A program made the translations under genes and the position numbers. Below the pieces are notes generated by a model, which saw only the letters and a program-made list of their open reading frames with translations, ran no database searches and had not been told where the DNA came from. 64,000 nucleotides of DNA from Podarcis erhardii (Eukaryota): assembly GCA_964252035.1 (NCBI GenBank), contig OZ176209.1; one strand, written 5' to 3'. Of the stretch, positions 5,774-36,072 are shown piece after piece. Positions within the stretch are counted from its first letter, which is position 1. Each line of letters opens with the position of its first letter.

Positions 5774-6199
<426 letters not shown>

Positions 6200-10349: not shown

Positions 10350-13300
10350 GTGATGGGGAAAAGCATGGGAGGGGATGGTGCTGGAAATGCAACGTGTGGG
10401 AGGGGCAGGTGGTGGGTTCAGACCTAGTTCCCATTTGCTACTCTTCTGCTACTCTTTTTTTCTTTGTGGAGTATTGGAGTTCTGCTTAGGCAGCGCTGAT
10501 GCGAAGTGCCACCTCTTTCTTTCCCCAGATCCCCCATCCCCGATGATCTCTTTTCATTTCTCCACTCACAGTTCCATTCCTGGCCATCACATGTCAGAGC
10601 TTAGTAGCTTAGCTTGTGTTTTCACAGTTGGGAAAGGCAAAGGCATGGTTGAGGAGAGGCCAGCATACGAGTGGGAGCAATAGCCGCAGAGTTTGGGGTT
10701 TTCTCGGCGCTAAACTGTGATGGTTAGTACAGATACGAGAAGGTGGCCTGAGGCGGAGAATGGAAGAGATAGAATGGGCATGAAGAAGATACAGGTCTTC
10801 TTACATATGTACTTTTAAGCAAAATTGATGGGACGTGAATAGTGTGGGATCAACTTAATGCATTTTATGTTGATTACATGCAAAAAAATCATTCAGTTCT
10901 TTTGTGAAGACTCTGTGGGTTAAAGGCTGAAATATGGAGTTGCATATATACATATACATATATATATATATATACTGAAGATAAAAATGTATTGAAATCT
11001 TGGTATATTTACCAGGGGGAGGGGAGATTTGATATGTATGCAGATCTAGCCAGTGGTCCAGTCAACAGTAACCCAGTGAGGTCACTTCTGAAAGACGAAT
11101 TGGAATGATAAAAGCGAATGCCAGTGAAACTTTCAGCAAAAGTCTTGGGAAAATTCAAATGTTGGGGTCCCAGGGGAGGTTTTGTTGCAGGTTTTGTGCT
11201 ACTCATGAACAACTTGTTAATTTTGAAATGGTGAAATATCAAATATGGGTTGGTTTATGCACAAGCTTAAATGTGAAAATTAATTGACACGAACCATCGT
11301 AACAACATGAGTTTCTTATCGCTACGATATTTAGTAGACAAACCCAGCAGAGCAAACCTTTCCAATGCAAGGGAACATAAAGGGCAGTGAATGAAAAGAA
11401 GAGCAGGGTTGGCAACTCAAGCTCCACTGTTGTTCTGATGAATTTAATCTGGCAGGGAGAAGGCTCAGCCATTGCTCCCCCCTCTAGAATATCATGCAAC
11501 ACGAGCAAGATGAATAATGGAAAGGCTTTCTCTGCTGATGGTGTATTTCCTCTGAGTAGAAAGTGGAAGAAGGCGGTGGTGGGAATAGGGCCAGCACAAG
11601 TTAGACATGTGTATATGTGTATTTATTGAATATATTCTTATATTTGATAATTATAGTGTTGTGGAAATACACGGCTTGTCTTCCACAGAGCATGAGGAGA
11701 TGAATCATCAGATCCTACAGATGCTGTGGTGACGACTGGAGAGCAGAGTTGGAAAGATGTGGGGAATATTGTTGTGAAGGGGACCGGCAGGTTCAAAAGT
11801 GCAAAAGCGATATCACTTAGCATCTTGAGAGTTGTTCTGGCCCTGTCTTCAGTGCATATGGTACTGATAACAGCAGTTTGGCTACCAAGGAGGAATAACT
11901 GTAAATGCAAGTTAAAATGAGACACTTGTTAGAAGCGATATTGTTTCGTTTACAGCAGGAACCCTCAGGTAAGGGCAACAGGTCCATTGTTGCTTCCCAA
12001 AAATGTGGCAAAGCACCTCACTTTTTCATGGGTCTGTTGTTCTGCTTTCCTAACTGGAAAGGACTGTGAAAAGTGCTCTTCGGCTATCTTGGGCACATTG
12101 CAGTAGAACTGAACGCATGGACAGGCACAGGCCCTGAGCTTTGGAAGCAGCCATTCTTTTTCGAGCCACATTTCCTGCAGCTGATTCTCTTCTCGTGTAT
12201 CCTTCCAACCATACCCTACTTGGCTTTATCTTAATACCTTTCTCGCATTTAAGCCAACTGAAGGCCTTGTTTTTTTGGTAGGCAGAGGCCAGGAGGAAGG
12301 GCCTGAACATTTTGTGAAATCGGATTCCCCCACCTCCTCTGGATTTACTAAGCAAGTTATGGAAGGAGGGACGCCCTCTCTATGGTTGGAGGAGTAGAAC
12401 GCCTTTTGGTTCCTCTCTTCTTTCTCCTGTAAAGAAAATAATGCTTGCTTAGCAGTCTGCAGAAATGGAGTGAACCCTCTGACAAGAGCAGTTGAGAAGG
12501 CATTCATTTCATTTGTAAATATGGTTTTCTTTTCTATTACATTTTGTACAAACTAGTGCTTCTCTTCTTGTGAATATTCAGGTTTGGAGAGAAGAGGGAT
12601 TTTAGGTTGTCCTCCCACCCCTGCAACTTTCAGGCAATGTGTCTGGAACTTGTTTGATGTGGGCCCAGGCTGTTAAAAATGGGGGAGAAGGAGAGAAAAC
12701 TGCATGCATTGAATACCTCTATCTACACACCTGCCACCTTTTTTCTTCATGGTTCGAAAATATATTAGATCACCTCTAGCCTTGCTAGCAGGGCTTTCAT
12801 GTTCTAATGGAAGCACACTATATCTCCCTTGCTTGATTCTAAACTCCATACCATAACCCTTCTCTGGAATCTGGGTCCTGGGCATTGTGCTGTTTTCCCT
12901 TGGTGATGAAGCAAACCATCATTTTGAATGTTCAGTTTAGATCATCACCCAACACTACAGGGACTTCTCCAAAGTTAATGTTGGCTTGGAAACCTTGGGA
13001 CTGGGAAATCTCAGTTTACTAGTACTTCTTAAGGTTTATTAAGCAGCTGGGTTTGATCCTACTGATTAAGCCTGCCTTTGGCAGCTATGTCAGTATTCCC
13101 ATCCCTCAGCTGAAACCAAATACAGTTGAGAATGGTACTTCGGAGAAAATTAAACTGAAAAACAAACCAAAAAGATACTAACTGAACTCTCAGAATGATT
13201 CCAGATCTTTGTTTTGGATGACGGTTCACTATGGTTCACATTTTCTTATAACCTTTTTCTCTGACCCTAGCTCAATTTAAACGTTGAATGACATGTTTAC

Positions 13301-13554
13301 ATTTATAGTGTTTAGGTTTGATAATATTAAAGTGCTTTACAAATTTTAATTTGTGTGCACAGAGTGTGAAAATTGTCTGCTTAAGGATAACAGGAAATGT
13401 TGGAGGACTTTCAACAACAATCCATTTGCAGGTGTCTTGTGTATTGCCTTGACACATGAAATGAGCCTCTGGCTTTCTTTCCCCTTCTCTTTCATTTGAA
13501 ACATACATTTTTCTTTCTCTTGAAATTTGACCAAGAGGGAAAGGGTTGGTTGGA

Positions 13555-13556
<2 letters not shown>

Positions 13557-13588
<32 letters not shown>
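13557..13588. repeat. (CA)n microsatellite
   Basis: Direct reading. Confidence 0.95.
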
Positions 13589-13595
<7 letters not shown>

Positions 13596-16500
13596 GGAAC
13601 ACTGATTACAATTTTGTAATTTAAAATTCCGAGTGTTATTTCACTAAAAATAATCGAGTGAACATAACAGGAAATTTTAGCAGCAGGTGCTGTTTATGCT
13701 AGAATGGAGGCTGTGATGTTACTTGCTTAACTTGCCAAAAAAATACATGAGACTTTGTACGAGAGGCCAACAAAAGTGAATGTTTATCAGCTCAGAAACC
13801 CAGTTTCTTCTTCCTCTTAGAAAAATGGGGTGTGTTCCTAATATTTTTGTCATTTCATAACATTGATTCCCCCCCCCACCATGAACTAAGGGTGTTTGTT
13901 TTGCATGGGTGAGTGGTTCTGTACCTGAACATATATAATGTAACTGGTATGGTTTTTTTTCAGTCTGGCATATCTTGCCATTAATGTCTTTTGGGAGGAT
14001 ATATTGAAATACTTTTTAAATGCTCATACTTCTGGAGCCATGGCAATATGTATGTAATAAATGTTATGGTATAAAGGAGGAAAAGATGGGGTGGGGTGGG
14101 AGAATGGCAGACTTCCCATGCTGTTAGACATTAGTATGGCATGCTGCCGGACCACTTATTCTGGCATTCTTTAATGGAGGTGGTATGTCTGCCAATGTAG
14201 CAATACACCATGTTATGTTATGTTATATCCTGCCATAATGTGTGGTGCTCCATAAATTTGGTGAGTGGGGTATTATGCATGACACAAACATATCAAAGAA
14301 AATGGGTTGTCCCTGCATCAGCACTAATCTACAGGTTTTTAAAAGTATACTGCCCCTCTCCATCCCCACCCCATACTCCCTTGCACATGTAAATCAACTA
14401 GTATCTCTCATACTTGCCAAAATCCAACACAATCCCAATTTGGGCACAGGTATTCCGGCAGTTTCTTACAACCCACTTCCTGCCACTGGGAATTCTTCAA
14501 ATTCCTTTAATAAAAATCTACATCATTCCTAAATACAGTCATCGTTAGAATAATCAGAGGCTAGTTGCACAGAGGAACTATTTTGTTCCAGGATGTTGTC
14601 AGAACAAACATGTATGCCTCATGAGTTTGCTTAGATCAAGCATGGCCGTATCCCTTCTTGTCCAAAAGAGCTGGCAGCCTATATTCATGATTGTACTCCG
14701 TATTGCCCACCTGCTCCCAAATGGGGCTTGTGTTGGTTTCATTCCATCACATCCATCAGATATATGCGCATGAAGCTACCTGAAAGATCGGGCCCTGAAG
14801 TTCCTGGCAACAATAGAAGAGGACCTCAACCCCTCAAGCTTGCATTTTGCATCCTCTCCCATAAGTGCTTCCCTACAATTACATATTGAACATACCAGGT
14901 CTGTCCAAGTGGAAAACGTCCACTCTACTTCTGGACGCTGCTCGAATATGAAGAAAGTAATTAGTGGGACACTAGCTTTGTCCCCCAAGGGCTTATTTCC
15001 AGTTTGTAGCCAAATAGGCTTCCAAGCCATAATTCTGTTCTTAATATTCCCTACACCCTCACCACTGGAAAAGTTGGTTAGGGTTATAACCGCCAGTTAT
15101 AGATCCAGACATATAGCATCATTTTCATTATGGATGGGTTTCCATTTCTGGCACCCATCCAGACAAACTTCAAACTAAACCACCACATTTTAAAAACTTT
15201 TATTTTAAATACTTTGAAGGCCCGCCCTTTCCAGCCTCTGAATGTTACCAAATTCCCTTTATTGTTGACAATAATGTGAATTAGTGTAGAGTACATCTTG
15301 ACAAAATTAGAATATTCTCTATTAGCAAAGTCCAGTTAAAAACAACAAAGCAGTGCTATGAAGATTGAAGATCACTTCACACAACCAGACCAGCTTGGTG
15401 ATAGACCAGTGAGCTAAGGAGGGGCATAGACAAAGGGCACCCCCATAAGCTTCAAATTAAATTGCCCTCCTCCATGATGAGTTGGTGGAGTGAGTGGATC
15501 CAGGTTCAGGTCCGCCCGTGGTAAAGCTTAATACCATACCCAGCTCACATGTCATGCCATCTGCGAAGCTGTGGGGTATGCAACGATTTGACCACATGTC
15601 AGACTGAGCTGGATCCATTTGGTCAGCAAGCCCATCATGCCAATTCAATCATCTGAACTGGGCTCAAGATAAAATCTGTGTTATCAGTTATTCATAATTT
15701 AATTTATTTAACCTATCACAAGTGGTTGTAATGAATACCACAGTTAAGTTCTTGGAAGGTCCGACCTATTCCATACTGAGTTAACTGCATTTCTTTCATC
15801 ACCACATACTAAAAAGCTGAATAATATATATGTAGGTCTCACATAACTTCAGCAAAAAGCCTGAGTATGTATGGACACATCTCAAACATCAAAATCAATA
15901 TATTTCAGCAAACATTTTTGACTCTTTTTAGTCACAATAAAGCATTTTATCAAAGCAGAAACAATGCAACATTTCCTGACATTGTTTTTAATGTTATGTA
16001 TTCATGTTGTGCCATATATATCATCCGCTTATTTGATTGCGGTTATATGTAAATATAAGTGTACATATGTACAGGAGCTAATTACAGCAGCTATATTCAG
16101 GTTGGGGGAAGAGGGTAATTTTTTTATATGTACAGTATTTCCATATTAAGCAAAGGCATGGGGAAGGGGGAATTGACTTATGAGTTGTGGTTTTCCTTGG
16201 TCTGTGGTGTTTGAAGTTGTTTCAGTGGTTGCTTTTGCCAGTTTGGGAAGTTTATCTGGATGTTCTATGTGTGTGCTAAGAAAGGGACTCATGTTGGGGG
16301 AGGTTTGGGGGCTGGTGGCGGGTGGGGAGGAAAAGGGTGTTAATAGTTTCCTTAATTAGAACATGTATTGATAGCTAGAGATTACATGTTTGCGATTATA
16401 TGTTTGAAACACCAGGCTACCCCTTTCCTTAGATTGTCTGTCTTTCTTTTTTCCCCCTCTCTCTCCTCTGAAAACTGTCCCATGTTTCTCTCCCTTCCTT

Positions 16501-17560
16501 TTCCTGGGATGTTAGTAACATCCACCATTTTGATATGTGTGTCTTTCTCTGACATTGTTCAAGGGTCTTCTTCATCCACTTCTTCTGCAAGGAAAAGCCA
16601 TTTTCTAACATCCCTCCTACACAGCAGGTTGTTATTCTGGATCTTCTACGTTAAACCCATGTCAGAGCCTCACTCCCCATGTTCAAATCTGACCATAACC
16701 CCACCTTACTGAAGTGTGTTCAGATATCTTCTGAGGTTTTGTACCTCATTTTTTTGTTCAGACTACTCTGCTTCTTTGGCTGTCACCTCACCCCCTCCGG
16801 CTCTCTTGCTGTGCATGTGTGATTTTGGGCATCTAAAGATGGCATCTCTTTTCCAAGCAGAACCCTTTCATTGTGGGTAGTAAAGCTAGTGTGGTAGACT
16901 GAGTTGAGTGTTAGATTTGTACTTCACATCCTTACTCAGCCATGAAGCTTGCTAGATGGCCTACTCTTGGAGAGATGAAATTGGGATTATCCTAGATATG
17001 CCACCCTGCACTATTTGAAGGAAGGGCAGGATTTTAATTATTTAATATGATTAAAATATAAATAATTGACAGATGTTGTTACCCAGCCACCCACATGCTA
17101 ATAGGTACATTTCTGAAATCACCTGGTATTGCTCTTCAGCTAGTCAGGTAGCGGCAGAGCAGTGTACCATCTGTGATCTCCTTGGAAAAGTTCTTTTGAC
17201 TCTAATAAACAGTTGGCATGATTTGACAATTGAGGCATGGACACAAAGCCTTTTCACCATGCTTTCTTTCATGAGGGTCCTCATAAATCCCATCAAATGC
17301 ACTTTGTCAGCCTTCATTTCAACCATCTAACATTGTATTACCTTAAAATTGCCTTCTTATTACAAGAAATCTTGTTCATAAGTCTTTATATGGTTGGTTG
17401 CTCATCGTTATGTCCTCTCTAATTTTCTCAACACCCTTTTGTAAAAGTGCAAAATAAAATCAAAAGTATATCTAGTACGCTTACCCTCCCCTGTTCCCTC
17501 TTGCTACTGCCCTTGTTGTCTAACATCAGCCCTTTTGACACCCTGATCTTGTTATCCAAA

Positions 17561-17760
17561 AACACAAGGCGAGCCTGCTGGATCAGGCCAGTGGCCCAGC
17601 TAGTCCAGCATCTCACAGGGGCCAATGAGATGCCTATGGGAAGCCTGAAAGCAGGACTTGACCACAGCAGCCCTCTCCCCACCCTTGATTCCCAGTGGTT
17701 GGTATTCAGACACCTCCTGCCTTCAACAGTGGAGGCAGAACCATGCCAGAATAATGAGTT
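17561..17760 (-). mobile_element. Degenerate CR1-type 3' end fragment
   Basis: AACACAAGGCGAGCCTGCTGGATCAGGCCAGTGGCCCAGCTAGTCCAGCATC matches the recalled reverse-complement 3' end of a reptile CR1 lineage. Confidence 0.65.
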
Positions 17761-20700
17761 CCTCCCACAAAGTGGCCAATGTTCACTCCCCTCTTCACTG
17801 AGCCAGCTTCACTCATATCTCCTTATCCCTTGTGAAGGAAACAGACCTTCTTTTATTTCCAAAGGCTTGGTGTCTGAGGGTTTGATTTCCATTTGGGAGG
17901 TATGGTTTATGCTGAGTACAACCTACCAGAATATTCTCTCGCACAAGCTCCATTGAGCACTCCTTGTGCTGGATTCCACCCATTGTTTGTAGAGAGGTGC
18001 CTCCTCACCCCCCCCCCTCACTGCATTAAGGGATGTTCCTGCGTTACATAATCCTCACCTGCTCCTTTTATTTTGGTCATTTTCAAATGTTCTTAGCATC
18101 AAGTTCATGTGTTTTAGGCTACCAATAGTGGTGTGGAAAACAATGGCCTTAGCATGTTTTCCCTGAGAAAACAAAATAGAAAGAAAGGGCTCGTGGTAGT
18201 TGATGTTTTCTTCAGCAGCTGCAGGTTACCCAAGGAGCTGCCCTCACCCTTCTGTCACATGCAGAATAAGGATATTAATGTTTTGTTTGGCTTTCTGAAC
18301 TGTGTATTGGGGTGGGGATATGGGCGCATGCCAGCCTGACCATCTTTTAAAGTAAAGTGGGGTTCAGGGTAGCCTTTCAGCCCAACAATTTGCCTTTTCA
18401 GTTAAAAGCATCTGGATTTGCATTGTGCCTTTGTATTATTCTTACTGATTTGGAAATAACTTTGCTTAATGATATCTTCCCATGGAAAACTGGTAATTGA
18501 AATCTATTGGTTGACCAGTTCTCTAGCCAGTTAACTAGCTTTATTTGTACTGATTTTTACCATAATGTTATGTAATGCTTATTGTGTGCCTTTCATTTAT
18601 GTAGCAATTTGCAGGTCAATCCAATCTGTTTGTTTTAGTAGCAGCATCTGAAACAATGATTTGCAATCTTCCTAGCTCAAGTTCAATTCTCCCTTTGTAC
18701 AAGCCCCACTCGCAGGGTGCTGCCTAGGGGCAGGGGGAATCTTGCGCCCCTCCCTCTCTCTGGACCATAGAATTACTCTTGTGTGACCTAACTGTTCTAC
18801 AACAAAGGCAGGGGCAACTGCCTTTATAGAGATCACGTCCCAGAATATATACAGGGTTGTGGAACAAGCCATGCCCTTTTATTGACTCTGTGACCCTTCC
18901 ATCTAACCATATGAGCAAATGTGTAAGAACTGGACATGGGGAGTTCTGTTCTGGATAAAGAATGTGTAGAATATCATGAAGAGCCATGACTAAAGCCAGA
19001 GAGGATGCTGATGTTTCTCTCTACTAAGATATAAGCTCCACTTGCATTGTAGTTTGTGAGAGGGAAGCTGAGAGTATATATAGTTTTATCTTAAAGGCAG
19101 GTGTTAGTTTTTGTGATTTGCTGTAAGAGAGCAAAAGTAAAGCCTTGTGGAATGAGTTATTATTTTGCCAAGTATAAAACTGTTTAAAGCTCTTGGTTGG
19201 GGGCTCAATGGGTGTGGCAAAGGACTTTGGCTCCCTCTGAAAGGTTGATTTTACAGCTCAAAAGTCCTGTGTGCACGTGGTGCACATTTGCCACCTGAAT
19301 AAAGTGGACTGAGAGTAGCTTTACAGTGTACATATAGCTAGATTTGTAGACCGGAAGGACTAATGTGTGGCCTATTTTTCTGTGCAATTCATGATAGGCA
19401 GAAGAGATTAAGAACAGATTTGAAGGATTCCTTGCTAGCCAAACATCATTCCATAGAAGTGGGAGAATATGCCCCTCTGCAACTTGGATTCTGTTATTCC
19501 CACAACCCACCAACTCCCTTATGTTCTTAGTGGATGGTGCTGTCAGATGTAGGGCAATGTGTTATTCAGTATGTGGACAGTATGTCACAGATGCCTCTGA
19601 TTGTCACTGGTGACTGCCTATTGCTCTTATGTGCAACATTTCCCCTCCGTGCTGCTTCTGTTTCAGCTATCGGCTGCATCGTCATCCTTGTTAGTGTGCC
19701 AGCCTCTTTTGCTTCGCAGCCAAGGGCTGCACTGTCTGCAGCACAGCGCCTTGCTTTTCTGCCATGCCCTCCTTATTCACAGCCGGGTGCCAGGTGTCTT
19801 TCACTTGGTGCCAAGCTTCTTTCTGCCTTGCTACCAACTGCTGTGGTGCATACATCACTGAGTAACCTCTCATACATCTCAGAGGAAACATTGCTTGGAA
19901 TGCCCTTTGGGTGACTCCTGAGACTATGGCAAACCCATCAACACCCTTTAATTAATTGTTCATACTCTGTTGGTTCAATTTGCACTATTATCATGGCCAC
20001 CTTTACTCTTTAACAGGATGAAATTTAGACTTTGAGCCATAAGCTAAGTCTTGCTAGCTAGCAGATAACTGATTTGGATTTAGGCTAATGTGTTTCTTTG
20101 CTGAATAATGCAATTGCTAAAAGGCGTATTACAGCCAGTACCTGACATCCTGTCTTGTTGCAAGACTCTGGCAGGGTCATTTGGGGAAAGTGGGAAGGTG
20201 CATTTACTGCAATCCTCTCATTTCCCAAAGCCAGTTTGTGGATTGATAGGAGAGCTGTATGGGGGGAGGTCAATCTTCAGCATGAAGCACTGCAGGGACC
20301 AATTTCCCCCCTTTATGCCTAAAAAGAAGCTTTCGGTGGGAATACACATATTGGGAAGGAAGCACCAGGAAAGGGTTGAACCTCCACCCTTCTGCAGCCA
20401 TGATAAAATTCCTCCTTCCCATGGCTGCTTTAAGCCTAAGCAAGAAACACTTGAGAGGTTCAATCATAGGTCTTTGGTATTAAGATGCACCTTAGCCTAG
20501 AGATACAGATGAGAATTGGGAAAAGGAAAGCATAAAGGAGGTATAAGAGGCATGGGAATGACAGGAGCAAAGTCTCCTTATAGTCCATAACATTTCACAG
20601 TCAAATATTTAGTTCCTAGTATAAATCATTGGCTTTGGAAGCCTGACTCAATTACTGTGTTTATTCAAACAGGCAGGCAGGCACACACAAACCACTGTGA

Positions 20701-23700: not shown

Positions 23701-25017
23701 CACAGAGAAGGGCGACTCAGAAATCAGGAGAGAAATAAATGTTCCTCCCTAGTGAAATTCCATTGGCATTCTGTGCCATGTTCTTGTGGGTATCTCCAGC
23801 CACTGGGGAAAACCTGGATTTTCCCAGTCTTTTGGTTAGAGTCAATAAATCCCTCCTGTGTTGAATCTTGTCATCTCATATATTTATTTTTAATGTAAAG
23901 AGAACAAAGATGATGGCAGCAGGAGGATATGTGATGACTGGTAACCCTTGCTGCAAAAAGAAAACTTAGAAATATTTAAAAAAAATACCCTTGAAATATT
24001 TTGGGGGGAAATTGTGAATACTTTTTATAGAAAACCTAATTTTTATGTAGCATGAAAGTCACCAAAATAAATGATCAAGAACAAAAGTTGTGGCGAGAAG
24101 TTTTGTTGATTGAGGGCGGTGATGGGAAAAGGGGAGGTTGTGGGGAAAATGTTTGTGTGGAAGGGAGGGGAGTTGCAATGCATAATGGGGAGTGGGATGG
24201 GGTTAATGGCAGTCATGAATGTTTATGTGTTGTTGAAACATGAAGCACCTTGAAGTAAAGGTCATCTCTTACTAGGGAAGGCAATTGTGGTACTTGTAGG
24301 ACATCCCAGGGGGTGGCTTCCCAGACTGGCACTCGACAATATGTGTACAACCATGGCCTCTGCCAAACTGGGTGCATGAATACTGTACACCATTTTGAGG
24401 CACTTTGGGGCAAAAATTGTCTACAATTTGGGGAAATAATAGGCTGGGATTTGACCAATGCACAGCATATCATGTTGCCACCTTGAGGGGAAATTTCCTG
24501 AGGGAATGCAAATGTTGTTCAGAGAACTTGCTCCCTGCCTGCCCCTGTGGGTTGCTGGCAGTTGTGCATGTCTGCTTCCTGTGGTTTGGGGCCAATGGGT
24601 GATGTGAGAAGGCTGGCTCCTCATTGGTGGCATTCCTTGGAGGTTGGCTGCTTGATTGGTCCACTGCTTTCTCCAAATTATTGTACCGTAATTTTCCTAC
24701 CCCAGGAGCTCCCTGTCAACCACCTCTTCTCCCTGTCAAAGAGAGTTGAGAGATTTAAGGGGATAGGAAGCTGATAGTTTGTCTGCTTGACCCTGCCATG
24801 GAGATGGGTAAAAGGGAGAGGATATTTTCTTCAGGGTTGGGTGGGAGGAAGGAGAGGGGGTAAATATATGGAAATGCAGGTGAAATTCTTTTAGGGAGTG
24901 GATCTCTTCAAGGGGAACAATATGGGTTGGGATCTGTATAGTAAGTTAACTGGTTGGCCTTGTGTAAAGTTGCTGTTGTGATGCAGCAGTATGTAGTGTC
25001 AAAGAAATTGTACTTAA

Positions 25018-25080
25018 GGGCTCAAATCCCACTTCTGCCTTGTATTGGGTGTGTGGCCTTGAACAAATTGATTGTCTCCA
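25018..25080 (+). mobile_element. Ancient MIR/CORE-SINE fragment
   Basis: GGGCTCAAATCCCACTTCTGCC...TGTGTGGCCTTGAACAAAT resembles the MIR B-box plus core (GGGTTCAAATCC...TGTGTGACCTTGGGCAAGT). Confidence 0.45.
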
Positions 25081-25394: not shown

Positions 25395-25395
<1 letters not shown>

Positions 25396-25447
<52 letters not shown>

Positions 25448-25448
25448 T
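25396..25448. repeat. (TAT)n microsatellite
   Basis: Direct reading. Confidence 0.95.
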
Positions 25449-28400
25449 AGCATTACCTGACCAGAAGGTAAAATTAAAATTCTTTGGTTTTCCAAAAGCA
25501 TTTTATGTGTTTTCTAATCAAACATAGATTTGCCAAGCTAAATGTTGTCCAATCACAAAAATAATAGCAGATTTGAATTCCTCACACCCCAAAACTTATT
25601 TTCACCGCTCTTCACTGAAGAAATTTGCAGAAATTAAGTTTCACCACCAAACTGACACGCCCAACTGGTGAAATGTGTAAAAGGCAAAGGGTCTGTTTTC
25701 TTTGCATGTAATGCATAAAAAGACCCACTGTTCTCTTCAACTCCTTAAACATGTGAACTCTCATTAGATATTTTGCAAATTCATATGCTGCACTTATCTT
25801 CTATGGTTTAAATTTTGTTTTTTTGTTATTTATTAAATTTATATACTCCCAGAGTCCTTAACATGACCACAGCTTGTAACACAATACATAATACAGACAC
25901 CATCAAGGCTATACAGTATTGGGTTGTGAAAACATTAACATTAAAATTCCACAACCCTGTAACCATTCCATTTTTCCCTTTAAAAACAAATAAACATCTG
26001 AGGAACAATCTGGGAGAGCTGCTTACACGTCTCCCATTCACTTCAGTGGAGTTTGTGCAGGAGAACTTTACTGGAGTGTTGTGCCCCAGTTTTGTTTTTG
26101 ATGTACAACTAGACTTTTAGTTGCATCTGTTTTGGTGTTTACCATCTTGCAAGCATTCCATTAGCAGAAGCATATTTTGAAGCACCAACTAGCACTTGTT
26201 GTGTGGCTTTTGTATTGTGCATCCCTGAGGTTTTTCTGTGTACATATGTTCCCTTGCCCTCTTTAAACCTAGCCCTCAAAGTAATCCCATAATTTCTGGC
26301 GTCCCTCCTGATCTGTCTGATTCCAGAAATAATTTTGATCTTCATATCCAAATGGACCACTGGCCAAGATCTTAATATTGAATCACAGGAAGCAAATCTA
26401 TTCATCCACTCTGCATATACTGCCCAGTTTCTATTAGGCTTTAGTGGTACAGCAAAAATTGGTTGGTAGTTTACTGAAACAGGTTGTCTTATTACTTCAA
26501 AGTAAAACTGGAAATGTGGTAAAACTTCCCCCTTCCATCCATTCTTTAATCAGGTGCAGGGCAGATGATAGGTTCTACTTTACAGAGCACAGCCTTCTAT
26601 ATGAAGGTATCGTTTGTTTGAACGTCTGTCTGGTCCATGTCCATTTTAAAGAGAAAGGAACCTAAGAAGGGAGCACAGCAAAGGCCTTGAAGGAGGGAGA
26701 AAAGGAGGTTGGAAGTTGCCCATCAACAACACTGGGTGGTAGAATCAGCTGGCACACAAGCCAATCTCGTCACAGTCTTTCCCAAATGAGATGTACTGCA
26801 TTTTTGCATAAATTATGGAAATTGTTTCTAAATTTGTATCTCTACATATAAATTAGCATAGGCCAATTTTATGCAGATAAATACCCTTTTCTCCTCTTTT
26901 TTGATCATGCATAAGTGCGCTCTTGCGGTGGTTAGGTAAACCGGGCTCTTTTCCCTAGAATGCCAGCACACAATAAGGGTTTGAATGTTGTTCCAGGTAG
27001 CCTCTATTGAGTTCACTTCTTCCCTTCCCTTATTCTTCTGGGTCGGTAAGATCTTAGACCAAAGAGGAACAGATATCGCCTCTGAGCCGCTGTGTGGAAA
27101 ATCACCTTCCATCACACAAGCAGAAATTCCAGGCATTTTGTGACTTTCTCTGCCCTATCTTAACCGCTAGCTATATATCCCTCCTGTATCCAGAAAAGAA
27201 TGGCTTCCTGGGCTGCTTCCTTATCTGAACTGTTAAGCTGAATGCCATGAAGCATTTTCTGCTGTTCTCTCTGATTAGCCAGCCTTTGCCAAGGAGGTGT
27301 GAAACTGAGGCCTGGACATCAAATCCTCTTGCTCAAGGTTAAGTACGGGCTATGCAATTGCCCTTCAGCAGCTTGCTCTCTTTCTATTAGCTGTGGTGGA
27401 CACTGCAGAATGTTAAGTGAGTTTCTCTGTGTGAGTGGAACTCTCTGAAGATAAGTAATGTGGGAGATTGTGTACGTGTGCCTGCATGCAGAGGGACTGT
27501 GGATAGTTTCAGTACTTTTTTTCAAGGAGAAATTCCCCTTAAAACTCAAGCAAAACCTTCCCTACACAGTGCAAACAATGAGGTTGCCATCTTGGGTGCT
27601 CTAATGCATCTCCCACCCACGGCCAAATCCAACATGCTGGTTTGGGATGTTGTGTCAATTTTTCTGTAATGTCTGTCACTGATGCCCATATAGGCAGCCC
27701 AGGAGAGTGAAGACTGATGCATGTCATAAAAGCAGGTTAATGGGGGTCATGACAACACGTTTGCAAATATCTAACGGTGTGGTTTGAATGAGGGAGAACA
27801 ACTGTCTGACAGCCACTGAGGGGCAGAGGCGAGGTTATTGGTATACAGCACACAGAAGGCTTAGAGTATGGGGTGGGTGGGTCATCATTGCTCTGTCTAT
27901 ACTAGTTTGTGTTACTTTTACTGCTATGATTTCTCCCACGGATTTGTGAGCACTCTTTTTAAGAGATTCCTAACCCCACTCAACTATATTTCCCTGGGGA
28001 AGGAAGGAATGACCATGTTTGGCACAAATATGCCCATTGAGTATTAAGGGCCAACATGTAGTGACAGACCCTGTTTATAAGTAGGTAATTTTCTAAATTA
28101 TTTTGATGTATCTTTGTGTCTACAAAGTTGTGGCCCAAAGGCAAACCTTTCTCTCGTAGCAAACGTGCACTTTCCAGTTTCTATGGTGGCAAAAACAAAT
28201 TATTCCTAAACAGGGAAGTATCAAGCAGCTTTCAACCATGAGAAAGAAAAGCAGTGCTAGATTTCTTTAGATTAAGTCATAATTCAATTGATAGGGACAC
28301 ATTTAAATAATGTGGCAAATTTAAAACAATTCAATCCTTTCTAATCTCATAAAGTCAGACAGCTGAAAAGGGGGATCTCAAAGGGAGGATGCTCGAGGAA

Positions 28401-28505
28401 TTTGGCAGGCTGAAATCTGAAGTGGACTTTGTCTCCGGGACTGATGTGTGGATTAGAACATAGCCCTCTGCAGAATCCAGGCTTCCACCAATTCTATGAG
28501 GTGGT

Positions 28506-28589
28506 CTTCCTTCCCTCCCTCCCTCCCTCCCTCCTTCCTTCCTTCCTTCCTTCCTTCCTTCCTTCCTTCCTTCCTTCCTTCCTTCCTTC
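28506..28589. repeat. (CCCT)n(CCTT)n microsatellite
   Basis: Direct reading. Confidence 0.95.
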
Positions 28590-29292
28590 TCTTTTAAAAT
28601 CCCCTTTGTTTAACAGGCAATATCTGCTGCATGCTATATGTGGCTGCAAGTCCCTCACAGGGCTACAGTATGGGAAGAAAATGGCTGCCCCCATTTAGGC
28701 AGCCATCTTTTTTTCTGTACCATTTCCCTGTGAGGAATGTCACCTCACCACATGCCATCACTCCCCCAGGGGCATTTGGGACAATCATGCACTCTACCCA
28801 CTCCAATAGATTTTGTTTGTTTGTTTGTCAGAGACCATTTTGAAAACTACAAGTAATTTATTTGAAAACACATTTGAAATAATTCACCAGAGGGTGCCGA
28901 ATTTTGGCGTTGCACAGGGCACCACTGAAATTTGAAAACCCAAAGTCTGCCACTGCAAGGACACATTCCAGCCAAGCTCATAATAATAATAATTTATAAT
29001 TTATACCCCGCCCATCTCAAGGAGGGTGTGTTATAGAGGTAGTGAGGGGTGAGGCCTGCGGAGAAGGAAATTACCTTGGAAAAGTCCTGAGAACTGTATA
29101 GAGACATCTGAAGGGTCGCATCAAGCTTCTGGGCCAGAGGTTCCCCTCTCAGCTCCATATGCAGACTAAAACCTCATGGAGCTTGGAGTGAAGACTATAT
29201 CAGGCCATTTTGAAGTAAGTCTTGAAACACCTCACCATTGATACCTACTTCTGAGTGTCACGTTTTATCATGGATTTGCACACTATCTAAAT

Positions 29293-29428
29293 CAGGCATA
29301 GGCAAAATCTGCCCTCCAAATGTTTTGGGACTACAGCTGCCATCATCCCTGACCACTGGTCCTATTAGCTAGGGATGATGGGAGTTGTATTCCCAAAACA
29401 TCTGGAGGGCCGAGTTTGCCTATGCCTG
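29293..29428. mobile_element. Young 136-bp palindromic hAT MITE
   Basis: Perfect 14-bp TIRs CAGGCATAGGCAAA/TTTGCCTATGCCTG; perfect 8-bp TSD ATCTAAAT (29285-29292 and 29429-29436); arms pair over 58 nt with 6 differences. Confidence 0.95.
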
Positions 29429-31561
29429 ATCTAAATGGTTTCTAGACAGGTGTAAAGATTAAGATCTCTCCTTTGATTCACTGACTATCTAGACATTAAC
29501 CTTAAATGTGTTTATGTTAAGAGTTTACATTAACTGGTAAATTGACAGATGCTATCATTTATATACATTATGCAAATTGTTTTGCATAATCTTGCCTTGT
29601 ACACAATTACATAGTATTTGCTGATGAATAAATTGGGTATTTACAAATACAGTAATACAAAAAGCAATCAGAGACTGCAGGCTATGGGCATGATCCAGCC
29701 CCACTTTTAGGGCCAGTTGATTTCAGTGAGAAAATTTAAATTTATCTTTCAATGCCTCACATTTAAATCAGTGTGTCTATAAAGTGCTTAAGTATGACTG
29801 GATCATACTTTGGGAGCACCACCTGCCAGGTAATCTGCACAAACTCTATGACATCGGTGGGAGTTATGTGACTCCATTGCCACTCATTTCAATGGGGCTT
29901 GCGCAAGAAAACCTCTTGGTGAATGGTGCCTGTTATATACTTTATATTGGATTTCAGAAGGAATGTAAGAAGTCTGGAGGATTGTGAAGGTCCACACAGT
30001 AGCTCTCTAGGAATCCAGTATAGGATCAGTGGTTTGCTGCCTGCTTCAGGAGTTACTTTGCTTCATCGAATACTTGTGTATACTTGAGCTATTGTGAAGC
30101 CACCATATGACCCTGCTCCTCTTTCATCTAAAGAAAATGAATCCTTTAAGCTCTGTCCCTGGACTGATGACTGCTCAGGGACATTCCTGGCTCAGGGTGC
30201 CTTACTTATGCCTGGTCCAAACCAATAAGTCTTTATCAGAGGGCCCAAGGATACTTCACTCGGACTGACTGCTAGTAATTCTCCTTTCTTTCCACCATCC
30301 CAGTCACTTATACTGGGCCTTTTCCCAAGCTTAGGCAGATAGGCTTCCTGGTCTGAAGTGCCTTCATAATTCATGGGCTTCTGGATCACTCCTTCTCTTG
30401 GATCGTGACCCTGGAGTACAACAGCTGTAAGGGCCTGAGCTTTCATGCTATAATACAGTTGGCAAGGGATTTCTCCTCATCCATGGCTACAGCTTGCAGT
30501 CAGTCATCCTCCAAGCCACCTTGCATGTTCCCTTGCATTTTTTACATATTCTCTACCACTTTCCCCTGACTGCAGGCCTCAGCTACTCTACCTTTGTACC
30601 ATGATCTCCAGTTCTTTTTCAGTTCATAGGACTCTCCCCTAGCTTTTCATTTGGATCACTGCTGGAAACACCCAAGACAGACAAGAGTCTGTTGTTTCTC
30701 AGCTGCTAACCCTTCAACACATTCAGAATTGATAAGGAACTCCTTAGCTATCCACATGGCAGCTCTTCTGTTGGGTCTCTGGGCCTGTCTTGACTTCCTT
30801 GTAGCTGACGATCCAGTAAAGCTCTTACCTGTTGATATGCCACCTCCGGACTCTTGTTTGGAGTTGCTGTAATTTCTGCTGCTCTCTTTTTTTGACTCAC
30901 GCCAACTCACAGTTTCCCTCCAAGGTGGGTGGGTAATTTCCTTCTTTGTGACCAATCTTAAGTGCTCTCCTCTTCCTCAAGCAGCGGGAAGCAAAGGGAT
31001 AGCATCCCTCTATTTCGTTTTCTTTGGAGAAAGATCATGGTATTCTTAAGGTATCTTTGGTAAACTGCTTGTTTAACATACAAACAGCAAGCAGGCTGTT
31101 ATAAAATAGGTAGCACAGCCACTAAGCCCTAGATTAGATTCCCAGAGCACAAAACTGTGGACCTACACAACCCTCTGAGTTGCCTTGAATTCTACTACCT
31201 TGCAGCTGAAACTCTCTAGTTCATGCTGTCTTTACCCCCACAGTCAAACTGCCAACACACTCATGTGGAGCTTTGTCTCCCTACCTGCAATCTTTCCTTT
31301 CGTTGTTCTTTTTTTTGTTATCCTCAACAATACAGTCAATGAATAAAAACGGCATAAGAAAAAAGACAGCTTAGCAATGGCTGATAGTAATTTGTAGTGC
31401 AGTCTCATACGATTAAAGTAAATACAATCAAAACAAGCCTAAAAGGGGGGAGGGACTTTGGTCAGGGAGGAAGGGAAAAAAGGCAGGGGCAGGGATATGC
31501 TCCAGCAGAGTCTGCTGGGCATGTACTTCATGCAGACAATCCCACAGAGAGAACACCTGTG

Positions 31562-31838
31562 CAGAGGTGTAGTGTGGGGGAAGGGCAGGGGGGAACATGG
31601 CCCCGGGTGCACATCTTTGAAGGGATGCAATCAGGTGCCCGCACGACAGGCATGGAGTCTTGGCAGCTGAGGCATGGCAGCAGGTGGCTTGGTCTAGTGG
31701 GCAGGTGGAGGAAGCAGTGGGTGAGGGGCCTGTTGGAGGTGGGCTCCGTTCACCCTTGGCGTGGGCTTTGCATCCCTCTCGCATGTGCCCCCACCCCTGC
31801 TGACGCCCTGATTGTCAGCAACCCATGTTACACCACTG
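31562..31838. mobile_element. Older hAT-type non-autonomous element
   Basis: Ends CAGAGGTGTAGTGTGGG...CCCATGTTACACCACTG are CpG-decayed versions of the TIR of the 40784-40941 element; flanks CACCTGTG/CCCCAGTG (6/8). Confidence 0.7.
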
Positions 31839-34052
31839 CCCCAGTGTTCTAGTGCTAATTTCCGTTGTGCTGTCTGCTGAAGGTGACTTCTCCTATGGTG
31901 TAAGGGTACATGAGTCTTCTGACCACTGAGCAATGGGAGGGGGAGTTTACAGGGGACATACATTCCTTCCAGTGCTGTAGCACCATCCTTTTGCCCATCA
32001 AGAAGGCACACAACGTGCTATTATGTTGTCTGTCCATCGAAGTCCCTCAGCATTGGAATATAACCAGTACAATGTGAGCATCCAAGAGTTTTAAGTTCCA
32101 TCCTGCTGGTGAATTGCCTAGCCATGAGCTGATCAGCCCTGACTTACCTTCACGCAATCAGCTAAACATGGGTCACTGAGGGTCAAAGCAGTAGGGATGG
32201 GTCAAAAGGAAATGGCCACAAGCCAGTGTGGTGAGGCCTGTGCAAGCCTCTTTATTTCAGTAGGTTTGTGAATGCATAACGCTGAGCTGGATTAGGACCA
32301 GAGTGTGTGCAATTTGCACACATGATGTCGGTGTAGCATGCTTGAGAGTCTAGCTAGTCCTTGAGTGTGAGAATCTCCCTTACTTTATACTGTGTTTTCT
32401 TTGCCGGTTGGGTTGGAACAAGAAGTGCCAGTACCTAAATAAGCCTGCAAACAAAACCTCTGCTTATAGACATTTCTTATCCCTGTAAGCTCCAGAAATC
32501 CTGCAAAGAAAGCAGAATTCTTGGGAGATTTCTCAACTTGATATCAAGAGGTTTGGATAAGCTCTGCTTCTGTGGCTAAGCTTCCAGGGGGGCTCTTCTG
32601 TATGGGATCTTCAGATTTGATTTCCCCCCAGCCACTGGCTTGTATTGTCTTCCCCATGGGGTAAGGTGTTCTCTCTGAATACTACTACAACACTGACTGC
32701 ATATTTTCTCCTCCCCATCGCAAAAGAAGCAAACTGTGTTATTTACAAAGGTGTGCTTGTGACAGTAAGACTTAATTCAATTTCATAATCATATGCTTCA
32801 TTCTCTCAACATGGTCACCGGACTCTAGTCCTAAAGATACGGGCCTTGAGGAATATCCAGCTGTATCAGGGTAGGACTTTACCGGCTTTAAAAGTTGCTT
32901 TTATGTGATTAATTGGCTTGGCCTTTTGATGCAAATGGTGTAGGATGGCTGAACAATTCCAAAAAGAACAAGGACTGGTTACCATTCCTATCATTTCTGT
33001 TAGTGCAGTTGAGGGACTTCGTTACAATATGTAGGAAAGCATGCAGTTAGCTTTCTTTGGGAGTGGAATAGGCCTCAGTGATGAAGATATAATGGAAAGA
33101 TGTGTTGTTTATTAGAAGAAAAGCTTTTTCCCACTTGTAACTGACCTGCCATGTATACCTCTATTTAGATTCAAAAGAAAAGTCTCAGCAGCACACTATG
33201 TTCAAAATAAATTTCCTTCTCTCAACCTCATTTGGATGACCTCATCTGCAAACATCCAACAAGGAACCTGTAATTCTTGCTTTATGTCCTTTATCTGGTA
33301 TAGTTCTTCCTCAGTATCAGCTCGGTTGATCAGTTTCAGTGGGAGATCTCAAAGGCAAGTGGCTGAAATCCAGTCAGTATTCTGCAAGTGAATTTAACAA
33401 CTTGTTTGAGTAAGAAAAATCATTTTGTTGTCTAGATCCATCAGTACTTTGACGGTGGCAGGGGGCATTCTGGTTTCAAAGCCAACATATTGACTTTGGG
33501 GGTTAATATTTCAGACACTTGAGGACTTTTTTTTTTTTTATAAGTATCAATATTTGGATTTGTTTCTCTTGTTTTTCAATACTGTGGAATGGTACAGGTT
33601 AAGTAATGCCATAACTGCACCCCAAATCCAGATGGTGTTGAAATGACTACATATATATATATATTCACAACATTTTATTTTTCTGAGTTGTTTAGATATT
33701 TTTAAATATCTGAAAGTTTTTTCTATCTGTTGGGTATAAATAACTTAATAATATTTCACATGACATTTGTATTGAAAAGCTCCAGTTGACCTGTGGATTG
33801 CATTCCAAAGCATTAATAGCATAGAAATGTATTTAAAAGAACTTGTTGGATGATTTACAAAATGGAGTTTACACTGCAGTATGTATGAGTAAATGGTGAT
33901 GGAAAATGCACAGAATGGATGTTTCCACGCTGTGTTTTTAGTTTCTCAGGCCAGGAGCATCCCTTTTACAGCCATCCATTCGCACAATTTTAGTGGTTAA
34001 TGTGAAAGTTACAACTTAACTTTTTATCATTTCCAAACGCATGGAAAGTATA

Positions 34053-34079
34053 GTGTGTGTGTGTGTGTGCGCGCGCGCA
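34053..34079. repeat. (GT)n(GC)n alternating purine-pyrimidine tract
   Basis: Direct reading: GTGTGTGTGTGTGTGTGCGCGCGCGCA. Confidence 0.95.
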
Positions 34080-35538
34080 GTAGAATTTATTTATTTCTTT
34101 GTTTTAAATTGGTTTGCCTTTGGTTCCGTTTACATGGCATGTGCAGCGGAATGAGGTGAAATGCTTGCAACTCCACCTGTGCAGTTTCCTCTTCCATTTC
34201 ATCATGCAAACCATCTAATGTGATGAAGAGAATGTTCCAAATAGAAGAGATTGGTGGAGAACAGAGAGGCACCCTTCCAGGCCGAGATTCCCAAATATTG
34301 GGTATGAACCTGCCTTTGACCCAAATGAGGTGGCTGCTCTTGGGTGTTGTGAGGAAATCAGCACAACTGAATGTAGAGCAGTGACGATGTTCCACGGATA
34401 TCTCCTATTAGTAATACGTTTGGGAATCCCTGGCACAGGAGACTGGGTGCCTTTCGTGGAGATTATTAACACATAGCATTTTCTTCCTTCATCTCCTGCT
34501 GTTTGCTGAGCTTTTGAAATTAAGTTAAGGCTGCCAGCCATCAACCTTGAGGTGATGCCTTTCCTTTTAAAATGACAAGGCACCATGAACAGATGCTGCA
34601 GCTAAGCTTCTGCCCCTTTCCTCCACCCATCACTCCAGCCTCCCTCCTCTCCTGGTTGCAGTAGAGCCAAATTTAAGACTTACATTTTAAGTCATGCTTG
34701 GTGCAGGTGGTGGTGGAGGGGAAGGGTGGGGGCAAAGGGACTCACAGAAGAATGGTGTTGGTGCCACAATGGCTGCCTATTTTTTTCACTTCCTTGGAGC
34801 TTTCCAAGTGGTAGGTGTGGTCTCCGGGTTGATGGGCGACACTCCTAAATTTAATGCCTGAGCCAAATGAGATGGGGTGGATGGGGCCTGGGGTGGTTTT
34901 GATTTAAACTTTTCTCTCTTGGTTGGGTTCTCTGGACTCCTAGTTAGTTTAGGGCATGACATTCTTTGTGGGCAGGAGCTGAGGTAGGGAGGGTTGAGAG
35001 TCAGGGAAAGGGTTTACTAGCTTAGTGTCCAATCACAGCTTTGTTACCAAATGGCCATGTTGGCCCAGATTATTTTCAAAATGGCTGCTGGTGCTATTTC
35101 AGCATATATCAAGGGAACACTGCTATGGATCCTAGTTGGGGGTGGGGCAGGAGGACAAAGCATTCTGAATGCAAGCTTGACGACACAAAGGCATCCAGTG
35201 TGGGGTTCAGGCAGAGACTTGGAAATGCAATTTCCTCACACAACTAAAACAGGGGAAGGAGACATCATTATTACTTTCCCAGCGTAGCGCCTTCCCAAGG
35301 GAAAGCGCCGTCGAACTCAGGCTTGCCTCGTCTCTCTGAGGCCCAAATCCCACTACCCCCACCAATCACTACTCTTCTTTCTCCCAATCCTCCTGTCCCC
35401 AACACCTCCCCCTCTCCAATTCTTTTTTCTGTAAATAGCTATTTCTGATTTCGGACAAGCAGGGATCGATAGATTCTGGAGGGGGGAGGACAATTGTTTT
35501 ACTTTTTCCCTTTCTCTTAATGATTTTTGGTGTTTGAA

Positions 35539-35671
35539 NNNNNNNNNNNNNNNNNNNNNNNNNNNNNNNNNNNNNNNNNNNNNNNNNNNNNNNNNNNNNN
35601 NNNNNNNNNNNNNNNNNNNNNNNNNNNNNNNNNNNNNNNNNNNNNNNNNNNNNNNNNNNNNNNNNNNNNNN
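35539..35671. other. Run of 133 N (gap or masked sequence)
   Basis: N from 35539 to 35671, about 290 bp upstream of the candidate AATAAA. Confidence 0.99.
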
Positions 35672-35881
35672 AAAAGAAAGTCGTTGATTTCCCCCCATTG
35701 ATTTATCTTGTTTCTCACTGGGAGTTGTTTTGGGAGCAGATGGTTTTTTGGGGGGTGGGTGGGTGAAATGTATAGATTTTCAGTACAGCATTGCTCAAAC
35801 AATGCAGGGAAAAAAACTTTAAAAGAAAGGGGGGAAGGAACAACAACAACAAAAATAAAACAATATGAGAAAACTTTGTGA

Positions 35882-36072
35882 TGTACAGAATCTGTAAATA
35901 GTCAAAGATTCTTTCTCTTTTCTAACAGCAAATTATTTCTGTCACTTTATATTCAAAAATAAAGAAACCTACCACAAAATATCAGGGTAAAAAAAACAAA
36001 AAACCACAAAGCCCAAGAATCAGAGTCTTTTCTTGCATGTGGTGACGAGTGCCAAAGTGTGTTGTTTGGTGG
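35882..36072 (+). promoter_or_regulatory. Candidate distal cleavage/polyadenylation module
   Basis: TGTA at 35882 and 35893, AATAAA at 35958-35963, CA at 35983-35984, downstream T/GT-rich tract 36025-36072 (GTGTGTTGTTTGGTGG at 36057-36072). Confidence 0.6.

What the first reader, a model, noticed from the sequence alone, without database searches (positions are those of the whole stretch)
10350..35984. Candidate ~25.6-kb GRIN2B 3' UTR in a reptile, with length apparently conserved with mammals
Seen: the strongest poly(A) architecture downstream of the stop lies ~25.6 kb away (AATAAA 35958-35963). The interval has no coding signal, few young retroelements and sense-strand RNA-regulatory motifs. 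Established (recalled, verify): the human GRIN2B reference mRNA is about 30 kb, with a 3' UTR of roughly 25 kb, among the longest known. Inference: the ultra-long UTR predates the mammal-reptile split, and its length or end position has been held roughly constant despite sequence turnover. This would be unusual and may be unannotated in reptiles.
Basis: partly seen in the sequence, partly recalled or inferred. Interest (0 to 1): 0.72.

Follow-up and report, generated by a model that had tools for sequence, protein, structure and literature searches.

The report
Lizard GRIN2B 25.6-kb 3' UTR
The 25.6 kb after the stop codon of a lizard's GRIN2B (NMDA receptor 2B) gene end at a poly(A) signal that is almost letter-identical in a bird and matches the published far end of the mouse Grin2b mRNA, so this is very probably the reptile version of the already known ultra-long mammalian 3' UTR, though no lizard RNA could be checked.

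Summary
The window holds the last GRIN2B coding exon (stop 10347-10349) of a squamate. AATAAA at 35958-35963 is real.

It sits at the 3' edge of a block of about 860 nt (35178-36035) that aligns collinearly to a bird contig. Identity is 59/60 around the hexamer, and conservation decays about 75 nt past it.

Published chicken RACE primers for the "lncRNA" AK043754 map into the bird's copy of this block, on the GRIN2B strand. AK043754 was later shown to be the distal end of the mouse 19-kb Grin2b 3' UTR.

Stop-to-signal distance is 25.6 kb in the lizard and 22.0 kb in the bird. Papers give 25 kb for human and 19 kb for mouse.

Other support:
- collinear anchor blocks;
- no CpG island, no coding hit and one repeat in the interval;
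- a T>A, G>C strand skew that plateaus at about 36 kb.

A second bird-conserved poly(A) site lies at 24066, giving a 13.7-kb isoform.

Sense-strand regulatory motifs are not enriched.

The parts
8445..10349 (+). Last coding exon of GRIN2B (GluN2B C-terminal domain), stop codon 10347-10349. It contains a 156-nt N run (10155-10310).
   Evidence: Pfam NMDAR2_C, E 2e-174. The translation ends SSIESDV*. It is 98% identical to Python and Gekko GRIN2B. The N run is exactly 156 nt in the Python and Gekko alignments too.
10350..35984 (+). Candidate full-length (distal-isoform) 3' UTR, about 25.6 kb.
   Evidence: Collinear conserved anchors to a bird along its whole length. No CpG island, no Pfam or Rfam hits. 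T>A/G>C strand skew averages 0.093 per kb here against 0.002 downstream, p=0.0008, and the cumulative curve plateaus at 35-36 kb.
10350..16800 (+). Proximal conserved UTR segment, about 6.4 kb.
   Evidence: It aligns almost continuously to Python, Gekko and garter snake at 69-87% identity, while 10 kb of Gekko upstream intron does not align at all. Six or more collinear blocks align to the bird, up to 16392.
13326..13331 (+). ATTAAA, candidate proximal poly(A) signal about 3.0 kb after the stop.
   Evidence: The hexamer is identical in Python and Gekko. Usage is untested.
17453..17458 (+). AATAAA just past the end of the proximal conserved segment.
   Evidence: The hexamer is kept in Gekko within a small aligned block. 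Usage is untested.
23981..24097 (+). Bird-conserved block holding AATAAA 24066-24071 and a GU-rich downstream element. Candidate internal poly(A) site giving a 13.7-kb UTR.
   Evidence: 84% identity over 115 nt to the bird, E 2e-27, collinear (bird +12.3 kb).
29282..29439 (.). Near-perfect 158-nt hairpin (69-nt arms), probably a MITE-type insertion inside the UTR.
   Evidence: Found by the repeat finder. Fold energy -103.5 kcal/mol, z -13.3. A related copy lies at 52059-52159.
29497..29577 (+). Small collinear block conserved with the bird.
   Evidence: 76% identity over 82 nt, E 5e-8. It lies at bird +18.8 kb and lizard +19.15 kb.
35178..36035 (+). Terminal conserved block, ortholog of the AK043754 3' end.
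   Evidence: 35178-35538 aligns at 73% over 372 nt (E 5e-52). 35676-35887 aligns at 81%. 35929-35999 aligns at 96%. Chicken AK043754 RACE primers map into the bird's copy, and more weakly to window 35442-35495. Places 35889-35926 were left out of all comparisons.
35539..35671 (.). N run (133) inside the terminal block. Not filled.
   Evidence: Both flanks are collinear on one bird contig, which has about 72 nt between them.
35958..35963 (+). Distal poly(A) signal AATAAA. Predicted cleavage is at a CA about 35975-35984, with U/GU-rich sequence at 36026-36080.
   Evidence: 59 of 60 letters around it are identical in the bird, whose hexamer is at +22.05 kb. Conservation decays after about 36035. 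Sequence read.

Best explanation
Positions 10350 to about 35984 (+) are the 3' untranslated region of the distal mRNA isoform of this lizard's GRIN2B. It is the ortholog of the ultra-long Grin2b/GRIN2B 3' UTR of mammals.

Transcription runs on from the stop codon through a 6.4-kb well-conserved proximal part and about 18 kb of poorly conserved sequence. Cleavage and polyadenylation follow the AATAAA at 35958, probably at a CA around 35975-35984. Conserved earlier signals (ATTAAA 13326 among squamates, AATAAA 24066 shared with birds) probably give shorter alternative isoforms.

By analogy with the mouse, the long UTR would serve translation efficiency and synaptic localisation of the mRNA.

Shown here: gene identity, the conserved anchors and terminal poly(A) block, its identity with the published AK043754 element, and the strand-composition signature. 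Inferred: that lizard RNA is continuous over the interval, which sites are used, and the function.
For: - Gene and stop codon.
- The terminal block aligns collinearly to one bird contig (E 4e-57 and 3e-27), with 59/60 identity around the hexamer. Conservation ends about 75 nt past it, and nothing orthologous follows in the next 3.5 kb of bird sequence.
- Four published chicken AK043754 RACE primers map uniquely into the bird block. Scores are 15-27; three clearly exceed the shuffle maxima of 14-15, while the 19-nt 3'-RACE primer scores 15 against 13. The 3'-RACE primers lie on the GRIN2B strand.
- PMC2926783: the last ~500 bp and the poly(A) signal of AK043754 are conserved in all amniotes examined, including Anolis. 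Orthologs were cloned from poly(A)+ chicken and opossum brain cDNA.
- PMC3638137: in mouse, AK043754 is the end of an ~19-kb Grin2b 3' UTR, shown by Northern blot with coding and distal probes.
- PMC12933152: the UTR is 25 kb in human and 19 kb in mouse. Deleting it halves GluN2B protein and impairs synaptosomal mRNA enrichment, LTP and spatial learning.
- Collinear anchors lie at +6.0, +13.7, +19.2 and +24.8-25.65 kb.
- Strand skew is present through all three sub-intervals and plateaus at 35-36 kb.
- No CpG island between the stop and the signal, and the interval is repeat-poor.
- Four transcriptome-sized contig sets of a related organism (71-97 M letters; the RNA label is the tool's guess) each hold 0.34-0.36 of the words of 25600-35538.
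Against: - Continuity, strand and the 3' end in this species are therefore inferred.
- No run that holds the stretch is on record as RNA.
- Eighteen sense AATAAA lie inside the interval, two or three of them conserved. Most transcripts could therefore end earlier.
- From 16.8 to 35.1 kb the sequence is mostly unalignable to the bird, and the part reachable in Python, Gekko and garter snake (up to about 20 kb) has only small patches.
- No sense-strand enrichment of PUM, ARE or CPE motifs.
- The link to mammals is indirect. It runs through primers and papers, not through an alignment to a mammalian sequence.
Confidence: 0.8

Rival explanations
1. The lizard GRIN2B mRNA ends at an earlier conserved site (13326, 17453 or 24066). 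The terminal block then belongs to a separate, independently initiated non-coding RNA, which is the original 'lincRNA AK043754' reading.
For: The conserved internal poly(A) block at 24066 has a good GU-rich downstream element. Chodroff et al. reported distinct apparent 5' ends for the mouse, opossum and chicken cDNAs. No lizard RNA data were obtained.
Against: The mouse Northern shows one ~23.5-kb band with both coding and distal probes, and continuous RNA-seq coverage. There is no CpG island or other promoter-like feature between 10.35 and 36 kb. The strand skew is uniform across the proximal, middle and distal thirds. The apparent 5' ends are not conserved between species, as expected for truncated cDNAs.
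Confidence: 0.13
2. The terminal block is a conserved non-transcribed element, such as an enhancer, that only happens to contain AATAAA.
For: Deeply conserved non-coding blocks near neural genes are often enhancers. No RNA was examined here.
Against: Identity peaks on the hexamer (59/60) and decays just past a U/GU-rich stretch, which is the profile of a cleavage site. Poly(A)+ cDNAs and ESTs end there in mouse, opossum, chicken and zebra finch. The 3'-RACE primers lie on the GRIN2B strand.
Confidence: 0.04
3. Chance: 35958 is one of many AATAAA with no special role.
For: There are 91 AATAAA in the window and 18 on the + strand in the interval. Its simple motif score is not the best.
Against: The collinear alignments to the bird have E 4e-57 and 3e-27, with 96% identity over 71 nt across roughly 280 million years.
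Confidence: 0.01

Closest known systems
Mammalian GRIN2B/Grin2b ultra-long 3' UTR (human ~25 kb, mouse ~19 kb; PMC3638137, PMC12933152)
   Same: It lies directly after the same stop codon on the same strand as a single uninterrupted terminal exon. Its length (25.6 kb) is similar. It ends at the element whose mouse copy is the mapped 3' end.
   Different: Continuity of the RNA and use of the distal site are shown in mouse (Northern, RNA-seq) but not in the lizard. Most of the middle of the UTR is not alignable even between sauropsids.
'lncRNA' AK043754 and its amniote orthologs (Chodroff et al. 2010, PMC2926783)
   Same: The terminal block 35178-36035 corresponds to its conserved 3' ~500 bp and poly(A) signal. 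The chicken RACE primers map into the bird copy. The paper already reports homology in Anolis and chicken but not in frog.
   Different: That paper read it as an independent non-coding gene. It is treated here, as in Miura et al. 2013, as the end of the GRIN2B mRNA. The distance to the stop codon in sauropsids (22.0 and 25.6 kb) is measured here.
Other brain-specific 3' UTR extensions (e.g. Ntrk3 16.6 kb; Miura et al. 2013)
   Same: Distal poly(A) site choice in neurons gives a very long UTR, with shorter isoforms from conserved proximal sites.
   Different: GRIN2B is at the extreme of length. Tissue-specific site choice was not tested here.

Membership tests
GRIN2B ultra-long 3' UTR (amniote ortholog) | Starts at the GRIN2B stop codon, on the same strand, with no intervening gene. 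| tested here: met
   NMDAR2_C exon ending SSIESDV* at 10349. No Pfam hits, protein relatives or Rfam hits in 10350-35538.
GRIN2B ultra-long 3' UTR (amniote ortholog) | Ends at the amniote-conserved terminal block with its conserved poly(A) signal (the AK043754 3' end). | tested here: met
   The bird-lizard block runs 35178-36035, with 59/60 identity at the hexamer. Chicken AK043754 RACE primers map into the bird block. A direct alignment to a mammalian sequence was not possible with these tools.
GRIN2B ultra-long 3' UTR (amniote ortholog) | Length about 19-25 kb from the stop to the distal signal. | tested here: met
   25,609 nt in the lizard and 22,045 nt in the bird. Human 25 kb and mouse 19 kb come from PMC12933152.
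GRIN2B ultra-long 3' UTR (amniote ortholog) | One continuous transcript joins the coding sequence to the distal end (Northern or RNA-seq). | not testable with these tools
The only hint is that transcriptome-sized contig sets hold 0.34-0.36 of the words of 25600-35538, and their RNA status is a guess.
GRIN2B ultra-long 3' UTR (amniote ortholog) | No internal promoter between the stop and the distal site. | tested here: inconclusive
   No CpG-island-like window lies between 10.35 and 36 kb; the nearest is at 40501-41300. Promoters without CpG islands cannot be excluded from sequence alone.
Independent lncRNA gene (AK043754 as first described) | Its own conserved promoter and transcription start. 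| tested here: not met
   No promoter-like CpG island lies upstream of the block. The paper itself reports that the start sites do not align between species. The mouse Northern contradicts an independent RNA.

The most novel reading that the evidence does not exclude
The layout of the UTR, not only its two ends, is ancient and held in place. Collinear anchors sit at about +6, +13.7 (a second conserved poly(A) site), +19 and +25 kb. Total length has stayed within 19-26 kb across amniotes whose genome sizes differ about threefold. This would mean stabilising selection on spacing or length, and an alternative-polyadenylation pair (about 13 kb and 25 kb) that predates the bird-squamate split.
Probability: 0.2. 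Interest if true: 0.55.

Novelty: new member of a known kind. Interest (0 to 1): 0.3.

Why it matters
GRIN2B has one of the longest 3' UTRs known. Deleting it in mice halves GluN2B protein and abolishes LTP (PMC12933152).

Finding that a lizard and a bird keep the same terminal poly(A) block at 22-26 kb from the stop, with collinear internal anchors, dates the ultra-long form to at least the amniote ancestor. It also marks the few short segments most likely to carry its function: the proximal 6 kb, the 24-kb site, the 29.5-kb block and the terminal ~860 nt.

In practice it helps annotation. Reptile gene sets probably truncate this UTR or place false gene models on it. The garter-snake record has a 250-aa model starting 313 nt after the stop.

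It is not a new kind of biology. The terminal conservation, including Anolis, and the UTR identity were published in 2010 and 2013.

Tried and rejected
1. Read laying on 33000-38999 with four runs. The tool says the filter can trip by chance, so I draw nothing from it.
   - I blanked those places in every later comparison and sent them to no search tool.
   - I left out the paper's degenerate reverse primer, which would overlap them.
2. Spurious ORFs inside the UTR as handles to fetch lizard contigs from the protein collection.
   - The word search on 31397-31849 gave nothing.
   - Ten exact ORFs are not in the collection.
   - The collection's gene caller reads through TGA on vertebrate contigs, so most ORFs cannot be given by reference.
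3. Logan bird contigs P0065, P0066 and P0064. These are genomic, still contain the intron, and end less than 2.4 kb after the stop, so they were no use for the distal part.
4. Hopping along the garter-snake record through its downstream 250-aa model. The first exon has only 9 codons, so the spliced protein has no single reference. I left the joined step out.
5. Motif-based ranking of poly(A) sites. It does not single out 35958.
6. Sense-strand enrichment of PUM, ARE, CPE, UGUA and other motifs: none found.
7. Rfam at gathering threshold on 10350-35538: no hit.
8. Earlier scan notes: nothing on this locus.
9. No comparison with human sequence was made, and no contig that I take for human was fetched. 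Mammalian Logan clusters (P0003, P0069, P0070) were left unfetched because their species is unknown.
10. A fuzzy-regex primer search timed out and was replaced by local alignment.
Full report
**What is in the window**

- An open frame at 8445-10349 (+) matches Pfam NMDAR2_C over its full length (E 2e-174). It ends SSIESDV followed by a stop at 10347-10349.
- Two upstream coding exons lie at about 5070-5316 and 5822-6094.
- The protein is 98% identical to Python and Gekko GRIN2B, 93% to birds and 87-88% to mammals. The genome is therefore a squamate.
- There are two N runs: 10155-10310 and 35539-35671.
- The first N run is exactly 156 nt (52 codons). The same 156 nt separate the flanking alignments in Python and Gekko. 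It is therefore a length-preserving blank, not an estimated gap. I filled neither run.

**The observation**

- AATAAA is at 35958-35963 on the + strand, 25,609 nt after the stop.
- The interval has no ORF with a Pfam hit. Its largest distal ORF has no relatives, and there are no Rfam matches.
- Repeats are scarce. One 158-nt hairpin repeat is the only interspersed element detected. There are 3 microsatellites against about 10 in the 28 kb downstream.
- Two parts of the description do not hold.
  - A simple hexamer/UGUA/GU score does not rank 35958 first.
  - Classical regulatory motifs are no commoner on the sense strand than on the antisense strand.

**Comparison with other sauropsids**

I searched the last-exon protein, listed cluster members and fetched the DNA around orthologs.

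*Squamates* (Python L003, Gekko L004, garter snake L024):
- The first ~6.4 kb after the stop (10311 to about 16780) aligns almost continuously at 69-87% identity.
- By contrast, 10 kb of Gekko intron upstream does not align at all.
- Beyond about 16.8 kb only small patches align, within the 10 kb that the tool can fetch.

*A bird*:
- Its DNA is present as host DNA in two JGI metagenomes and one ENA assembly. Its protein is 99.3-99.5% identical to bird GRIN2B.
- It could be followed much further. An exact 22-mer search and three hops along contig Ga0065711_1002689 gave 25.6 kb downstream of its stop.

*The collinear chain, bird against window*:

| Anchor | Window | Lizard distance from stop | Bird distance from stop | Identity |
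|---|---|---|---|---|
| Proximal blocks | up to 16392 | +6.0 kb | +6.7 kb | varies |
| Block with AATAAA 24066 and a GU-rich downstream element (alignment A1) | 23981-24097 | +13.7 kb | +12.3 kb | 84% |
| Small block | 29497-29577 | +19.15 kb | +18.8 kb | 76% |
| Terminal block, left part | 35178-35538 | +24.8 to +25.2 kb | +21.35 to +21.71 kb | 73% over 372 nt, E 5e-52 |
| Terminal block, middle part | 35676-35887 | +25.3 to +25.5 kb | +21.79 to +21.97 kb | 81% |
| Terminal block, right part | 35929-35999 | +25.58 to +25.65 kb | +22.02 to +22.09 kb | 96% |

- Around the hexamer 59 of 60 letters are identical. The bird's hexamer lies 22,045 nt after its stop.
- Conservation fades by about 36035-36136, and nothing orthologous follows in the remaining 3.5 kb of the bird contig.
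- This is the conservation profile of a cleavage and polyadenylation site.
- Both flanks of the 35539-35671 N run lie on the one bird contig in order, so they are continuous. The bird has about 72 nt between them.
- ATTAAA 13326 is conserved in all three squamates compared at that site, and AATAAA 17453 is conserved in Gekko.

**Link to the literature**

- Chodroff et al. 2010 (PMC2926783) described a mouse brain 'lncRNA', AK043754, between Grin2b and Emp1.
  - Its last ~500 bp and poly(A) signal are conserved in all amniotes examined, explicitly including Anolis and chicken but not frog.
  - Its orthologs were cloned from poly(A)+ chicken and opossum brain cDNA.
- Miura et al. 2013 (PMC3638137) showed that AK043754 is the distal end of an ~19-kb Grin2b 3' UTR. 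The evidence was continuous RNA-seq coverage and a Northern blot with coding and distal probes.
- Harvey et al. 2026 (PMC12933152) give 25 kb for human and 19 kb for mouse. They show that deleting the UTR halves GluN2B protein and impairs synaptosomal mRNA enrichment, LTP and spatial learning.
- The primer table of the 2010 paper let me tie these together.
  - The four chicken AK043754 RACE primers map uniquely into the bird's terminal block (+21.60 to +21.91 kb). Alignment scores are 15-27. Three clearly exceed the shuffle maxima of 14-15; the 19-nt 3'-RACE primer is marginal at 15 against 13.
  - The 3'-RACE primers are on the GRIN2B strand and the 5'-RACE primers are antisense.
  - The two 5'-RACE primers also find their best window matches at 35442-35495.
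- The window's terminal block is therefore the AK043754 3' end, which is the mapped end of the mammalian GRIN2B mRNA.

**Intrinsic signals**

- The sum of T-over-A and G-over-C skew averages 0.093 per kb across 10350-35984 and 0.002 in the 28 kb downstream (Mann-Whitney p = 0.0008).
- The skew is similar in the proximal, middle and distal thirds. Its cumulative curve rises steadily from 10 kb and flattens at 35-36 kb.
- This fits a sense-strand, transcript-linked composition that stops at the proposed end. I treat it as supporting evidence only.
- No CpG-island-like window lies between the stop and the signal. The nearest is at 40501-41300.

**RNA evidence**

- This is the weak point.
- The look-up of sequencing runs on 25600-35538 listed no holder on record as RNA.
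- Four contig sets of transcriptome size (71-97 M letters, one study, a related organism; the RNA label is the tool's guess) each hold 0.34-0.36 of the sampled words. Genome-sized sets hold 0.62-0.94.
- A random 5-6% sample of a genome would hold far less, so expression of several kb beyond the 24-kb site is likely but not shown.

**Conclusion**

- The interval is very probably (0.8) the distal-isoform 3' UTR of lizard GRIN2B, orthologous to the mammalian one. A conserved internal site at 24066 and probably proximal sites give shorter forms.
- The 'length conserved' remark is roughly true: 19, 22, 25 and 25.6 kb. Segment lengths between anchors differ by only 10-25% between bird and lizard.
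- Over the same comparison the two neighbouring introns vary about 2- to 11-fold between bird, lizard and garter snake.
- Low repeat load and conserved ends may explain this as well as selection on length would.
- Because the terminal conservation (including a lizard) and the UTR identity are published, this is a new member of a known kind and of modest interest.

Noticed in passing
window 29282-29439: Near-perfect 158-nt hairpin (69-nt arms, -103.5 kcal/mol, z -13.3) inside the putative UTR. A 73%-identical partial copy lies at 52059-52159. It is probably a MITE-type insertion. As double-stranded RNA in a neuronal UTR it could be an editing or Staufen-type target.
   Followed up: partly
window 40501-41300: The only CpG-island-like stretch outside the coding exon (GC up to 0.63, CpG o/e up to 0.72), 4.5 kb past the distal poly(A) site. 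It carries a perfect 22-nt tandem duplication at 40828-40877 and overlapping ORFs on both strands without Pfam hits. It could be an orphan promoter.
   Followed up: partly
window 10155-10310: This N run in the coding exon is exactly 156 nt (52 codons), and the same length separates the flanks in Python and Gekko. It is a length-preserving blank rather than an assembly gap of estimated size.
   Followed up: yes
L024 25758-35445 (garter snake, GCA_001077635.2): The snake record carries a same-strand 250-aa gene model that starts 313 nt after the GRIN2B stop and runs more than 9.7 kb. Its first exon has only 9 codons. It is probably a false protein model built on the long 3' UTR.
   Followed up: partly
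window 49460-50302 (-), also 41961-42247 and 2056-2129: A reverse-transcriptase fragment (Pfam RVT_1, E 1e-15) and related CR1-like 3' pieces. All lie outside the UTR interval. They match CR1 copies in the bird and Python loci.
   Followed up: partly
window 5617-5718 and 39494-39596: A pair of 103-nt segments 92% identical, one in the intron and one downstream of the UTR. This is a young interspersed repeat that is absent from the UTR interval.
   Followed up: no
L001, L002, L005 (bird contigs): Gene calls stored for these vertebrate contigs read through TGA (products with 1-8 internal TGA, ends only at TAA/TAG). The GRIN2B 'products' therefore run 147-163 residues past the true stop and do not translate back under code 11.
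   Followed up: yes
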